Assembly: GCA_002269645.1 (NCBI GenBank) | Contig: NIVC01004009.1 | Span: forward strand, 836-64,835 | Reading direction: 5' to 3' | Source of the DNA: Macrostomum lignano | Taxonomy: Eukaryota | Length of the DNA: 64,000 nucleotides | Part shown: positions 20,225 through 23,200 of the stretch, in pieces | How the letters are laid out: every line of letters begins with the position of its first letter | Numbering within the stretch: the first letter of the stretch is position 1 | The notes under the pieces: generated by a model | The model's input: the letters and a program-made list of their open reading frames with translations, nothing else | Told to the model about the DNA's origin: nothing | Databases searched by the model: none | Position numbers and translations under genes: made by a program

Positions 20225-23200
20225 TCAGTCAGAAAGATGCAAAGCCAAAAACTTCTTAGTGGGTCTCGACTGGGCTGAATTCAAATCTCCAACTGGTACT
20301 CCGGTCCTACCAGTGGCTGCTCGAAGCGCCTCAGTCTCGGCCTCGAATATCAGCCGGGTCTCCTCAACGAACTCCGCAGCCATGTGCGCGACGCTTCCAG
20401 CACAATTTGGGTCGCAGTTCCAGGCCTCCAATAATTCGGGAATCAAAGTCTTCATGGGCTTCTGTCCGCTCGAGTGCTCCGCTTTATTTCTCAACTCCTG
20501 CCAGATCACAAGCCAAGCAAATGGCTGCTGGAACTGAAACGCTTTTGATTCTCGAGCGCTCAGCAAATCAACGAGCGCATTTACTCTCTGATTCGCTTCA
20601 TCATTTGCGGATGCCTTCAGCTTGAGCAAATTTGAAAGTTTCTTGTTAATCTCCGTTCTTCGATTTTCGTGACTTTGTTTCTGTAATCCGCAAATCAACT
20701 TTTTTGTCTCATCCTTTTTTACAGTCATATACCTGAAACCGTATGGGAAGTAATCAAGCCTCTTTTCCATTTCGTAGCCATCCAGTTTTGCAGTTAATCC
20801 ATCCATTGCACTTTTTGCGAGTTTCAGGGTTTCCATGATGGCATTATAATAATCGTTCTCAGTCTGTTTCCCGAGCTGCTCTACTCGCTCCAGAGCCAGT
20901 CTCGATTTCTGCAGATCCGTCTGGACCAGAGGCGACGTTTCTGTGTAGTTTTCATTGTCCTCCTGTGACGCGATGCTGATCAGAGCGAGCAGCTCGTACG
21001 AGTCCTTGCTGAACAGCCACGGCACGATCTGCACTGGTCTGTCGGGGTGCTCAGGACAGTACTTCTGCTTGATGGCTTCTAGAGGGAACCGCCGCTGATG
21101 ATCCCGTCGGTTGTCCAGCAAGAGTCGAGCGGGCTGGCACGCCTCCGGGTTTCCAAGTCGGAGAGCCTCGACAATCAAGTCTCTCTTTTCAGCCCCATCT
21201 CTCGATTCGGCACGTTTGAGCAAAGCGGACGACAGCAGAGAGTTTTTACGAGGATTATCAGACTGGAGTTTTTGGAAGTTTTCATCTGCAGCTTGGAAGT
21301 CTTGAAGGCGAAGGTATAACAGACCAAGATGCTCGTACACCAACTGGTGATCCGAGTTTTCACTTTGCAGCGCCTTCTGAAAGCGTTCGAAAATAATTTG
21401 TGTAGATTGAAGATCCCAGTTCATGATGTGCAGCCTGAACCAAGCCTCCAGTTCGGGTCTTTCTGTCCGTTCGCATAGAATTTGCAATATTTTTTCTTTT
21501 TTCCAAGGAGGAAAGTAAACTCTGACATCAGGACACACTTGAACTGCTTCGACCATCGACTCAAAGCCGCTGTCAACGAGCTGCCGCCGACACATGTAGG
21601 CTCCCTTGGCATACTGAATGGCAGCTTTGTCTCTGTAATTATCCTTGTATTTGGCTATCATCGTATCAAACTCGTCCACAATAAACTCGTGCGTGAAGTC
21701 ATTCAGTCTTTCCTCTCTGTAGTCCTGCAAACACACGTCTACCCAAATGTGTCCAGGCTCAAGGGCCTCCTGCTGAGCTCGGATGAGCAGCCTCTCATAC
21801 TCTTCATAGTCAGATTCGTTTTCCATCAGTTTTGCCAATGAAAAAAATAACTGAGAGTTTTTTGTTACATCTTTTAGGCTGAGTAAGATGCTTCGTGGGG
21901 TTTGAGTGTCATTCAATTGCAATTTGAGAATTCGAAACACTTTTTCACATTTAAGAGCGATTCGGTAGTGGCATTCTAAATCTTCTGCGTTCAGGTTCTT
22001 TAATGCCAGAAACGTTTCAGAAGCCAAGCTTTCGCACTTTTCTCTTAGGTCAGCGTTATTCAAAAGTGCCTCTGAATAGTTAATTAAAAACTGCTGGTAA
22101 TACAGTCGAATTTCTTTGGGCGCATCGTCCAGGTTCTGCAAGTTAGCGAGCTCCTCGCTTCGCTTCCACAGGAGCAGCTCTTCTGGACCCGCAGGAGCCC
22201 TGTTGTTGCGGTATCTGCGCAAGCGCGCTAAAATGTACGCCAGCAGGTAGACGCACATGAAATTGTCGGGTCGCAAGCTCAAGCTGGTCCTAACAGCTTC
22301 CTCTGCCTGGACGTATTTCTCTATCCCTTGGTTAAACAGTGCCAGTGCCTTGACGTGAAATGCATTGGCTCTGACTTCGATTCGCTGTGCATTATCTGGA
22401 ACGTTCCAAGCCTGACCCAGAGCCTTTACGCGTTCATCGAACTCAGGAGACATTTTCTTTTGTTGTTGATCAAGATGAAGAGAGATGGCCTCCAGGACAA
22501 AGTCGCACCTAACGTGATGTTGATGGGCACTATTGCCAGCTTCTATAGCATCCTTCAGGTGCTTTCTTGCCTTGCTAAAATCAATCAGTTTGCGGCTTGG
22601 AGAAGCAGCAGAATGGTAAGCAGCAAGCAGACCTCCATACGCTGCGGATAGCATCGGCTCCAGCTTAAGTTTTTCAGACAGTTTGCGAATTACATCCTCT
22701 GGAGTTCTTAGTGAGCCTTCGTGAGCATTCCACTTGAAGGGGCTCTCAGCGTCCTTTAGCTGGTGTGGCTCCGCAGAGATTTCCTGATGTAAAATGGAAT
22801 TAAATTTGGACAATCGGTAAAATAAAGTTGAATAAAGTACATATAGGTGAATTGATAAATAAAAACACGATGCATTTTATACATCGAGTCTCCATGTAAT
22901 GCATCGAATCGATGCATTTGAGTCTCCTAGTGACAAACCAATGTTACTTGGTACGACGGATAAGGGAACACAGCATCTGTTTTCTAACTTCCTGTCTGCG
23001 CTTAAAAGCGATTGTTTCTGTGTTTCACATAGTGCAATGATGTACGCACTTTGCTGCTTTTGAATCATTCTGCAAACCTTTCCCCTGTCAGACAATAGGA
23101 TTAAATCGATTCGTTCTATAGTTGTAGTTAAAATTCAGCAGATCGAGTTGACTCACAGAGAGAACCGGATTCGGCTTTACGATGTCCTCAAAGCTCATTG

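What the first reader, a model, noticed from the sequence alone, without database searches (positions are those of the whole stretch)
20330..21043. Paralogues differ in the putative sensor but share a near-identical effector
Seen: 9301-10014 and 21043-20330 encode 238 aa with only two differences (N/Y and D/N), and they match at silent sites as well. The RRM and N-terminal TPR parts differ by many substitutions and indels, with a gradual transition around SENSDHQ. Inference: gene conversion or domain swapping between inverted copies homogenises the HEPN module while the recognition surfaces diversify, as in immune receptor families. Identical HEPN halves would allow A/B heterodimers that integrate two RNA signals.
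Basis: partly seen in the sequence, partly recalled or inferred. Interest (0 to 1): 0.72.

Follow-up and report, generated by a model that had tools for sequence, protein, structure and literature searches.

The report
Gene conversion between inverted flatworm paralogues
Two tail-to-tail copies of a flatworm-specific RNA-binding gene keep overwriting each other's last ~1 kb by gene conversion, a well-known process; the proposed nuclease and immune-sensor role rests only on one short motif.

Summary
Window 9301-10014 and 21043-20330 differ at 4 of 714 bases (2 amino-acid, 2 silent changes). The first ~470 codons of the same exon differ at ~40% of bases, with silent sites saturated.

The window is eukaryotic: Macrostomum lignano or a very close relative. 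The two ORFs are the last exons of a convergent pair of RRM-TPR genes, A (+) and B (-).

Two further copies of the locus from the M. lignano reference assembly make gene conversion the clear explanation.
- The flanks always group by paralogue: 485 fixed A/B sites upstream and 13 in the last 45 nt.
- The tract has no fixed A/B site and groups by locus.
- In 9231-9530 two sequence types exist. One locus has A=alpha and B=beta. A second has both alpha. The window has both beta. So conversion has run in both directions since the copies split.

The functional reading is not supported.
- The 'HEPN' label rests on one RNKAEH motif.
- Pfam, PADLOC and PDB searches gave nothing, and both AlphaFold models were unusable.
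- No relatives were found outside Macrostomum.
- The N-terminal parts show old divergence under purifying or relaxed selection, not diversifying selection.
- Several copies carry stop codons or a frameshift, and window B has lost its first exon.

This is an ordinary mechanism in an orphan gene family.

The parts
5657..5869 (+). Gene A exon 1: start codon and first half of RRM1.
   Evidence: tblastn of the M. lignano protein P0001 aa 1-71 gives 98.6% identity. The ORF starts with ATG at 5657 and a GT follows the exon.
6346..6909 (+). Gene A exons 2a (6346-6465) and 2b (6559-6909), separated by a 93-nt GT..AG intron. They encode the rest of RRM1, RRM2 and a linker.
   Evidence: tblastn with P0001 aa 71-247. 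Splice sites were read. The unspliced ORF gives a weak RRM_1 hit, and P0001 scores RRM_1 at 29.8 bits against a 20.7 cutoff.
7546..10059 (+). Gene A last exon, 837 codons plus stop: helical/TPR region followed by the C-terminal module.
   Evidence: Open reading frame. An AG acceptor lies before 7546. TPR_8 scores 34.5 bits against a 25.7 cutoff at nt 9007-9093.
8956..9300 (+). Gene A transition zone: an older conversion tract, with wA-wB dS 0.175.
   Evidence: The 21 fixed A/B sites thin out, the last at 9295. dS.
9301..10014 (+). Gene A copy of the recently homogenised tract.
   Evidence: 4 of 714 nt differ from the B copy. No fixed A/B sites; 13 sites group by locus. In 9231-9530 it carries the B-type (beta) sequence.
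9853..9870 (+). RNKAEH motif (Rx4H) in A. This is the sole basis of the HEPN idea.
   Evidence: It is the only RNxxxH in the protein.
20225..22831 (-). Gene B last exon, open through to the stop codon.
   Evidence: ORF. tblastn with P0004 aa 224-864 gives 94% identity.
21044..21388 (-). Gene B transition zone.
20330..21043 (-). Gene B copy of the recently homogenised tract (the finding's coordinates).
20474..20491 (-). RNKAEH motif in B.
23157..23537 (-). Gene B RRM2 exon. Homology to the reference copies stops at about 23538-23541, so exon 1 and RRM1 are missing from the window.
   Evidence: tblastn with P0002 aa 112-238 gives 97.6% identity, and aa 1-111 are not found on the B side. L001 9315-10531 and L002 3533-4803 have no counterpart in the window.
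23675..24109 (+). PIF/Harbinger-type DDE transposase fragment. It lies in the ~0.7-kb stretch that replaces the 1.2-kb segment holding B's exon 1.
   Evidence: DDE_Tnp_4, E = 3.8e-28. Junctions.
10348..13252 (.). Spacer minisatellites between the 3' ends of the genes: 40 nt x 12 (10348-10842) and 23 nt x 89 (11211-13252).
   Evidence: Both arrays are also present in L001.
13996..18311 (-). Coding remnants of a BEL/Pao-type retrotransposon (pol 13996-17193, gag/protease-like 17586-18311) inserted in the spacer. It is absent from the two reference copies.
   Evidence: Peptidase_A17, RVT_1, rve and DUF5641 hits. No match in L001 or L002. No LTR pair of 100 nt or more was found.

Best explanation
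The window comes from the flatworm Macrostomum lignano or a very close relative. It holds a convergent (tail-to-tail) pair of paralogous genes, A and B. The family is known only from this lineage and has the layout RRM - RRM - helical/TPR region - orphan C-terminal module.

A and B are old duplicates; silent sites outside the tract are saturated. The last ~1.05 kb of their final exon has kept enough similarity for homologous repair to use one copy as template for the other. Repeated non-reciprocal transfers (ectopic gene conversion) therefore keep this stretch evolving in concert.

In the window copy, the latest event made 9301-10014 and 21043-20330 99.4% identical. At least for 9231-9530 it copied B-type sequence into A. 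It happened after the three copies of the locus diverged. These are probably the three subgenomes of this neopolyploid.

The tract edges lie where A and B become about 40% different, so heteroduplex cannot extend further. That explains a stable module boundary without invoking selection.

Shown: the identity pattern, the incongruent groupings, and conversion in both directions.
Inferred: the repair mechanism (fold-back or intrachromatid pairing of inverted repeats, or synthesis-dependent strand annealing), and that the boundaries are set mechanically rather than by selection.

Function of the module is unknown. I guess an RNA-related helical domain, with roughly a one-in-three chance that it is a divergent HEPN-like RNase.
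For: 1. Identity profile. dS between wA and wB is above 4 (saturated) in 7546-8955, 0.175 in 8956-9300, and 0.014 in 9301-10014.

2. Species and orthologous loci. The only protein hits are M. lignano RRM-domain proteins. L001 (NIVC01004067.1) and L002 (NIVC01000273.1) are collinear with the window at 94-97% identity and carry the same convergent pair.

3. Site patterns across window and L001 copies.
- 7546-8955: 485 sites group by paralogue and none by locus.
- 9301-10014: none group by paralogue and 13 group by locus.
- 10015-10059: 13 sites group by paralogue again.

4. Six-sequence difference matrices.
- In 9231-9530, type alpha = {lA, mB (0/300 differences), mA} and type beta = {wA, wB, lB}. 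The two types differ at 23-26 of 300 sites.
- lB and mB differ at only 6 of 1395 sites upstream and 0 of 294 downstream.
- So mB was converted by A-type sequence and wA by B-type sequence.

5. Silent-site distances. In the tract, wA-lA dS is 0.171, against 0.036 in their N-terminal part. wA-lB tract dS (0.063) is similar to wB-lB (0.078).

6. Permutation of polymorphic sites. The longest concordant runs are 28 sites for wA-wB and 39 sites for lA-mB (9149-9569), each with P <= 1e-4.

7. GC3 is 0.58-0.59 in the tract against 0.50 upstream. This is mildly consistent with GC-biased conversion.

8. The reference assembly holds about 85% of the genome in three paralogous copies, with SNP rates of 2.2% genome-wide and 1.1% in coding sequence (PMC10733133). 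This fits w, l and m being three such copies.
Against: - No reads are available, so the near-perfect identity in this particular assembly cannot be verified. 93% of short-read pairs multi-map in this genome, so mis-polishing is conceivable.
- L001 and L002 come from one assembly, and the source of the window is unknown.
- With six sequences, the direction of transfer is resolved only for 8981-9530.
- lA has a private divergent patch (9531-9720, 42-46 of about 190 sites) whose donor was not found.
- That selection plays no role in fixing the boundaries is an inference, not a test.
Confidence: 0.85

Rival explanations
1. Adaptive sensor/effector design. The C-terminal module is a HEPN RNase effector kept uniform because A and B must dimerise through it. 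The RRM/TPR parts are recognition surfaces under diversifying selection, as in immune receptor families. Conversion would be the means and selection the cause.
For: - RNKAEH is a textbook-looking Rx4H motif with a polar residue after R.
- In both low-confidence models it lies at the end of a predicted helix, before a loop. That is where HEPN motifs sit according to PMC3710099.
- An Ex3R (EANQR) lies 36 residues upstream.
- Animal HEPN families fused to TPR (DZIP3) or to RNA-binding domains (CXorf38) exist.
- The module is all-helical.
Against: - No HEPN-clan or any other family hit at E <= 10 in Pfam, and none in PADLOC or PDB sequences.
- An all-library HMMER search found only Macrostomum proteins plus one low-complexity artefact.
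- AlphaFold pLDDT of 46 and 40 allowed no fold test.
- RNxxxH occurs in 8% of shuffles of the protein, and an R[NQ]xxxH in 2.3% of shuffled last-120-residue stretches.
- No dN > dS signal. Between locus copies pN/pS is about 0.3 for B and about 1.0 for A. The one variable patch (8500-8739) has pS raised as much as pN.
- The family is a single pair per subgenome, not an expansion.
- lA and lB carry premature stops, mA a frameshift, and wB lacks exon 1.
Confidence: 0.1
2. Assembly or polishing artefact. The two copies really differ by several percent in the tract. Consensus polishing with multi-mapping reads, or a local collapse, copied one version onto the other.
For: - The genome is a neopolyploid in which 93% of read pairs multi-map, and copy-number errors in the assembly are documented.
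- No reads could be examined.
Against: - The same module behaves in concert in two other assembled loci, with different mosaics and clean type switches. mB equals lA at 0/300 differences while its flanks equal lB.
- Protein models from an independent annotation of M. lignano show the same mosaics: P0003 and P0009 against P0002.
- Switching A from alpha to beta means about 25 changes in 300 nt. Reads that different would not normally mis-map.
- Four differences remain in the tract, and the transition zone is shared site for site with L001.
Confidence: 0.06
3. A single recent partial duplication or exon-level swap. One event pasted a copy of the 3' half of one gene onto the other, with no ongoing process.
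For: One event could give an identical 3' part joined to an old 5' part in the window.
Against: - The tract is stepped (dS 0.175, then 0.014), which needs events of at least two ages.
- The three loci show different mosaics and opposite directions of transfer.
- The 3' edge lies inside the coding region, and the paralogue-specific tails and flanking DNA are untouched in all loci.
- The spacer is not inverted between loci.
Confidence: 0.04
4. Strong purifying selection alone keeps the C-terminal module identical.
For: The module is the best-conserved part of the protein.
Against: - Silent sites are as conserved as replacement sites: 2 silent differences in 149 silent sites, against saturation upstream.
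- The tract groups by locus rather than by paralogue.
Confidence: 0.01

Closest known systems
Arm-to-arm gene conversion in inverted repeats and palindromes, such as the human Y-chromosome palindromes (own knowledge, not retrieved here)
   Same: - Inverted copies a few kb apart on one chromosome are kept near-identical by non-reciprocal intrachromosomal transfer.
- The copies group by lineage rather than by copy.
- There is a mild GC enrichment.
   Different: - Only about 1 kb inside one exon is homogenised, not whole arms.
- The rest of the genes is anciently diverged.
- The arms are far shorter, and the spacer (4-10 kb) holds minisatellites and a retrotransposon.
Partial-gene conversion between tandem or nearby paralogues, such as human fetal globin HBG1/HBG2, RHD/RHCE and CYP21A2/CYP21A1P (own knowledge)
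   Same: - Mosaic genes with sharp tract boundaries.
- Repeated events of different ages.
- Disabled copies can act as donors or acceptors. Here wB lacks exon 1, and lA, lB and mA are disrupted.
   Different: - Inverted rather than direct orientation.
- A neopolyploid setting gives up to six potential partners.
- The gene family has unknown function and no phenotype is known.
Animal HEPN-domain proteins: DZIP3/hRUL138 (TPR + HEPN) and CXorf38 (dsRBD + HEPN), as described in PMC3710099
   Same: - Multi-domain animal proteins that combine repeats or RNA-binding domains with a helical module.
- That module carries an Rx4-6H motif with a polar residue after R.
   Different: - No detectable sequence-profile similarity to any HEPN family.
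- The fold is not established.
- The domain order (RRM-TPR-module) has not been described.
- No lineage-specific expansion and no death-fold or NACHT partners.

Membership tests
Ectopic (interlocus) gene conversion / concerted evolution | Paralogue similarity at silent sites is far higher inside the tract than in the flanking coding sequence. | tested here: met
   dS is 0.014 in the tract, 0.175 in the transition zone and saturated upstream.
Ectopic (interlocus) gene conversion / concerted evolution | Phylogenetic incongruence: flanks group by paralogue and the tract groups by locus or lineage. | tested here: met
   Orthology-pattern sites number 485 upstream and 0 in the tract. Locus-pattern sites number 0 upstream and 13 in the tract. 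The six-way matrices agree.
Ectopic (interlocus) gene conversion / concerted evolution | Non-reciprocal transfer with the flanks and spacer left in place (no crossover or inversion). | tested here: met
   - The window, L001 and L002 are collinear through both genes and the spacer arrays.
- mB carries A-type sequence while its flanks equal lB.
- wA carries B-type sequence while its flanks equal lA and mA.
Ectopic (interlocus) gene conversion / concerted evolution | Runs of shared polymorphic sites are longer than chance allows. | tested here: met
   Permutation test: wA-wB 28 sites, mA-mB 30 sites, lA-mB 39 sites, each with P <= 1e-4.
Ectopic (interlocus) gene conversion / concerted evolution | The identity is real in the DNA, that is, confirmed by reads. 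| not testable with these tools
   No read data were available. There is indirect support from two other assembled loci and from independent protein models.
HEPN superfamily (criteria from PMC3710099) | Rx4-6H motif with a polar residue after R. | tested here: met
   RNKAEH lies at 9853-9870 in A and 20491-20474 in B. RNxxxH appears in 8% of shuffles of the protein, so the weight of this feature is low.
HEPN superfamily (criteria from PMC3710099) | [quoted passage not shown] | tested here: inconclusive
   Two AlphaFold runs gave mean pLDDT of 46.3 and 39.6. The secondary structure is all-helical and places the motif at a helix end before a loop. The models are too poor for a fold search.
HEPN superfamily (criteria from PMC3710099) | Detectable profile similarity to a described HEPN family. 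| tested here: not met
   No HEPN family appears among Pfam hits at E <= 10. PADLOC gave 0 hits. PDB sequences gave only spurious ribosomal-protein hits with E above 1. The 1.84-billion-protein HMMER search found no relatives outside Macrostomum.
HEPN superfamily (criteria from PMC3710099) | Metal-independent RNase activity that depends on the R and H of the motif. | not testable with these tools
   This needs a biochemical assay.
Immune-receptor-like family with diversifying sensor domains | Excess of replacement over silent change in the recognition part. | tested here: not met
   - A against B: dN 0.37 with dS saturated.
- Between locus copies: pN/pS 0.29-0.32 for B and 0.93-1.02 for A.
- The variable patch 8500-8739 has pS raised as much as pN.
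Immune-receptor-like family with diversifying sensor domains | Lineage-specific expansion into many paralogues. | tested here: not met
   There is one A/B pair per locus, and five protein clusters in all, each from M. lignano.
TPR-containing protein | A Pfam TPR model scores above its curated cutoff. | tested here: met
   A: TPR_8 34.5 bits against a cutoff of 25.7, at ORF residues 458-486. B scores below the cutoff at the same place.
RRM-containing protein | Pfam RRM_1 scores above its cutoff. | tested here: met
   P0001 (A-type) scores 29.8 bits and P0002 (B-type) 36.1 bits against a cutoff of 20.7. The window exons map to these at 77-99% identity. The RRM1 exon of B is absent from the window.

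The most novel reading that the evidence does not exclude
The conserved C-terminal module is a previously unrecognised, highly divergent HEPN-type RNase. Fused to two RRMs and a TPR array, it would form a flatworm-specific RNA-sensing defence or RNA-surveillance protein. Conversion would keep the dimerising nuclease halves of A and B interchangeable while their RNA-binding halves stay distinct.
Probability: 0.1. Interest if true: 0.65.

Novelty: new member of a known kind. Interest (0 to 1): 0.3.

Why it matters
This is a clean, well-resolved example of ectopic gene conversion inside a single exon, caught in both directions among the copies of one locus in a neopolyploid animal.

- **For annotation.** The tract misleads orthology and paralogy calls and dating.
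- **For assembly quality control.** Macrostomum genomes hold up to six near-identical copies of this 1-kb stretch.
- **For method.** A 'conserved effector, divergent sensor' pattern can arise from recombination mechanics alone, so it should not be read as evidence of immune function.

The gene family itself (RRM-RRM-TPR-orphan module, known only from Macrostomum) remains uncharacterised. It would become interesting only if the module proves to be a nuclease.

Tried and rejected
- **Bacterial reading of the window.** Rejected. The ORFs with GTG/TTG starts are exons. Protein hits, splice sites, transposable elements and microsatellites show an animal genome.
- **HEPN by profile search.** Pfam at E <= 10 on the whole exon and on the 252-residue module, PADLOC, and PDB sequences all gave nothing.
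- **Deeper homologue search to build an alignment.** A 1.84-billion-protein HMMER search with the 319-residue C-terminus found only a Macrostomum cluster and P0006. P0006 is a 3865-residue glutamate-rich repeat protein matched in 18 short stretches, which I judge to be a compositional artefact. A profile search with A plus B found no new proteins.
- **Structure prediction.** Two AlphaFold jobs (319 and 252 residues, 5-6 near-identical sequences) gave pLDDT of 46 and 40. I therefore did not run fold search, because the matches would be meaningless.
- **Embedded RNA gene as the cause of conservation.** Rfam at gathering threshold on 5000-24500 gave no hits.
- **LTR pair for dating the retrotransposon in the spacer.** None of 100 nt or more was found.
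- **Literature.** I found no paper on this gene (Mlig022517) or on gene conversion in M. lignano.
- **Positive selection on the 'sensor'.** Tested by segment and rejected.
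Full report
**What is there.** The window is not prokaryotic. It is full of micro- and minisatellites and of retrotransposon, mariner, Harbinger and Maverick-like coding remnants. [quoted passage not shown]

tblastn of those proteins onto the window, plus inspection of GT..AG junctions, gives the following structures.
- Gene A (+): exons 5657-5869, 6346-6465, 6559-6909 and 7546-10059.
- Gene B (-): an RRM2 exon at 23537-23157 and a last exon at 22831-20225.

The genes are convergent, with their 3' ends 10.2 kb apart. 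The spacer holds two minisatellites (40 nt x 12 and 23 nt x 89) and remnants of a BEL/Pao-type retrotransposon.

**The observation.** It is correct.
- The inverted repeat 8942-10028 / 20316-21402 is 1087 nt at 96%.
- Inside it, 9301-10014 and 21043-20330 differ at 4 of 714 bases. Two changes are amino-acid replacements (N/Y at 9568, D/N at 9937) and two are silent (9672, 9909).
- Upstream in the same exon the copies differ at 40% of bases. Silent sites are saturated and dN is 0.37.
- Between 8956 and 9300, dS is 0.175. In the tract it is 0.014.
- Dense differences end at 8979, just before SENSDHQ (8980-9000).
- The 3' edge is abrupt at 10014/10015, still inside the coding region. After it the two proteins have unrelated tails.
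- Chance is excluded, with P about 1e-148 at the upstream difference rate.
- Purifying selection alone is excluded, because the silent sites are also identical.

**Comparative test.**

*The loci compared.* Two loci of the M. lignano reference assembly Mlig_3_7 carry the same convergent pair and are collinear with the window at 94-97%. These are L001 (contig NIVC01004067.1) and L002 (NIVC01000273.1). That assembly holds about 85% of the genome in three paralogous copies that differ by about 2% (PMC10733133). So the window (w), L001 (l) and L002 (m) are most simply the three subgenomic copies of one locus, or close equivalents.

*Window against L001.* The four-way site patterns are:

| Segment | Sites grouping by paralogue | Sites grouping by locus |
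|---|---|---|
| 7546-8955 | 485 | 0 |
| 8956-9300 | 21 (last at 9295) | 0 |
| 9301-10014 | 0 | 13 |
| 10015-10059 | 13 | 0 |

*All six copies.* The picture becomes explicit.
- In 9231-9530 there are two sequence types that differ at 23-26 of 300 sites. Alpha = lA, mA and mB, with mB identical to lA. Beta = wA, wB and lB.
- lB and mB are almost identical elsewhere: 6 of 1395 differences upstream and 0 of 294 downstream.
- Hence locus l keeps A=alpha and B=beta. Locus m has had B overwritten with A-type sequence over about 8981-9530. The window has had A overwritten with B-type sequence.
- In 9721-10014 the copies group by locus. wA and wB are 2 differences apart and 10-15 from the rest.

*Silent-site distances and permutation.* Silent-site distances agree. 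wA-lA is 0.036 upstream but 0.171 in the tract, and wA-lB in the tract (0.063) is similar to wB-lB (0.078). Permuting the 722 polymorphic sites gives P <= 1e-4 for the longest concordant runs. These runs are 28 sites for wA-wB and 39 sites for lA-mB, the latter spanning 9149-9569.

*What this shows.* This is the signature of recurrent ectopic gene conversion. There were at least two age classes, transfers ran in both directions, and the most recent events occurred after the three copies split. A single partial duplication does not explain the stepped profile or the different mosaics. The spacer is not inverted in any locus, so these are non-crossover events.

**How it most likely works (inferred).** A break in one copy is repaired from the other copy. 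The template could be reached by fold-back pairing of the inverted repeats on one chromatid, or the template could be one of the other subgenomic copies. Heteroduplex can form only where A and B are still similar. The 40%-diverged sequence on both sides blocks extension. The homogenised block therefore perpetuates itself and its edges stay put. GC3 is somewhat higher in the tract, 0.58 against 0.50. Nothing in the data requires selection for homogeneity.

**The functional claims.**

*HEPN: evidence against or missing.* 'HEPN' rests on RNKAEH (A 9853-9870, B 20491-20474).
- Pfam, which includes its HEPN-clan families, finds only TPR motifs in the exon and RRM in the upstream exons.
- The 252-residue module has no hit better than E = 0.016, and none to a HEPN family.
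- PADLOC and PDB sequence searches are empty.
- An exhaustive HMMER search of 1.84 billion representatives finds nothing outside Macrostomum except a compositional artefact.
- With only near-identical sequences, AlphaFold gave pLDDT of 46 and 40. No fold comparison was justified.

*HEPN: what can be said for it.*
- The module is predicted to be all-helical.
- The motif sits at a helix end before a loop, as PMC3710099 describes for HEPN.
- An Ex3R lies upstream.
- These are weak points, since RNxxxH occurs in 8% of shuffles of the protein. I put HEPN at roughly one in three.

*Immune-receptor analogy.* It fails the tests that could be run.
- The A/B N-terminal divergence is ancient and constrained.
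- Between locus copies, pN/pS is about 0.3 for B and about 1.0 for A.
- The one variable patch (8500-8739, in both genes) has silent and replacement change raised about five-fold together. That looks like imported sequence rather than positive selection.
- The family is one pair per subgenome.
- Copies are decaying. lA has a stop at codon 350 of the exon. lB has a stop at window-equivalent position 9440. mA has a 1-nt deletion at 9298.
- In the window, B has lost the 1.2-kb segment with its start codon and RRM1, replaced by a Harbinger-type transposase fragment.

*Heterodimers.* A/B heterodimers cannot be assessed here.

**Artefact risk.** Without reads, the exact 99.4% figure cannot be certified, and this genome is hard to polish. 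Several points argue against an artefact.
- The same concerted behaviour occurs in three assembled loci.
- The same mosaics appear in independently annotated protein models (P0003 and P0009 against P0002).
- The alpha-to-beta switch involves about 25 changes in 300 nt.
- The transition-zone sites are shared with L001.

I give an artefact about 6%.

**Verdict.** The sensor/effector, HEPN and immune interpretation is unsupported. This is a tidy new instance of a well-known process in an orphan flatworm gene pair, of modest interest. No step had to be referred. Retrotransposon sequences in the window were annotated by domain hits and coordinates only and were not printed.

Noticed in passing
window 23538-24246 (junction about 23538-23541; DDE ORF 23675-24109): Gene B in the window lacks the ~1.2-kb segment that holds its start codon and RRM1 in both reference loci. 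A ~0.7-kb stretch with a PIF/Harbinger-type transposase fragment sits there instead. B may be a 5'-truncated pseudogene that still exchanges sequence with A.
   Followed up: yes
L001 and L002 (window-equivalent positions 8596, 9440 and 9298): Three of the four reference copies are disabled. lA has a stop at codon 350 of the last exon. lB has a Ser-to-stop change at 9440. mA has a 1-nt deletion at 9298. These are either real decay in a redundant neopolyploid or assembly errors.
   Followed up: partly
L001 copy of gene A, window-equivalent 9531-9720: lA has a private, in-frame but strongly divergent patch, 42-46 differences in about 190 nt with two small indels. It is absent from the other five copies. 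Its source is either an unseen third donor or a relic of the original A-type sequence.
   Followed up: partly
window 8500-8739 and the mirror region in B (about 21600-21850): In both genes this stretch is about five times more divergent between the window and the reference loci than its surroundings. Silent and replacement sites are raised alike. This suggests another imported segment or an old polymorphism.
   Followed up: partly
window 10348-10842 and 11211-13252: Two long minisatellites (40 nt x 12.4 and 23 nt x 88.8, 96% matches) lie between the 3' ends of the gene pair. Both are conserved in L001. Whether they promote breaks that start conversion is unknown.
   Followed up: partly
window 13996-18311: BEL/Pao-type retrotransposon coding remnants: a pol ORF of 1065 aa and a gag/protease-like ORF of 241 aa, in a GC-rich block (0.54-0.57). 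The insertion is in the spacer and is absent from L001 and L002. No LTR pair was found.
   Followed up: partly
window 909-1203 and 27172-27494: A ~300-nt element occurs in inverted orientation (73% overall, cores 88-89%) roughly symmetrically outside the gene pair. It is either a relic of a larger ancient inverted duplication or two copies of a small repeat.
   Followed up: partly
window 28055-28550, 30548-31811, 51231-52474: Further large simple repeats: 15 nt x 33, 23/46-nt repeats followed by (CAGA) x 231, (TC) x 65, and 30 nt x 31.
   Followed up: no
window 32369-40414 and 60828-63341: Other mobile-element remnants. There are Gypsy-like gag (CCHC), RT/RNase H and integrase ORFs at 32.4-39.0 kb, a mariner-type transposase at 39.6-40.4 kb, and a protein-primed type B DNA polymerase with an Endonuclease VII domain (Maverick/Polinton-like) at 60.8-63.3 kb.
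   Followed up: no
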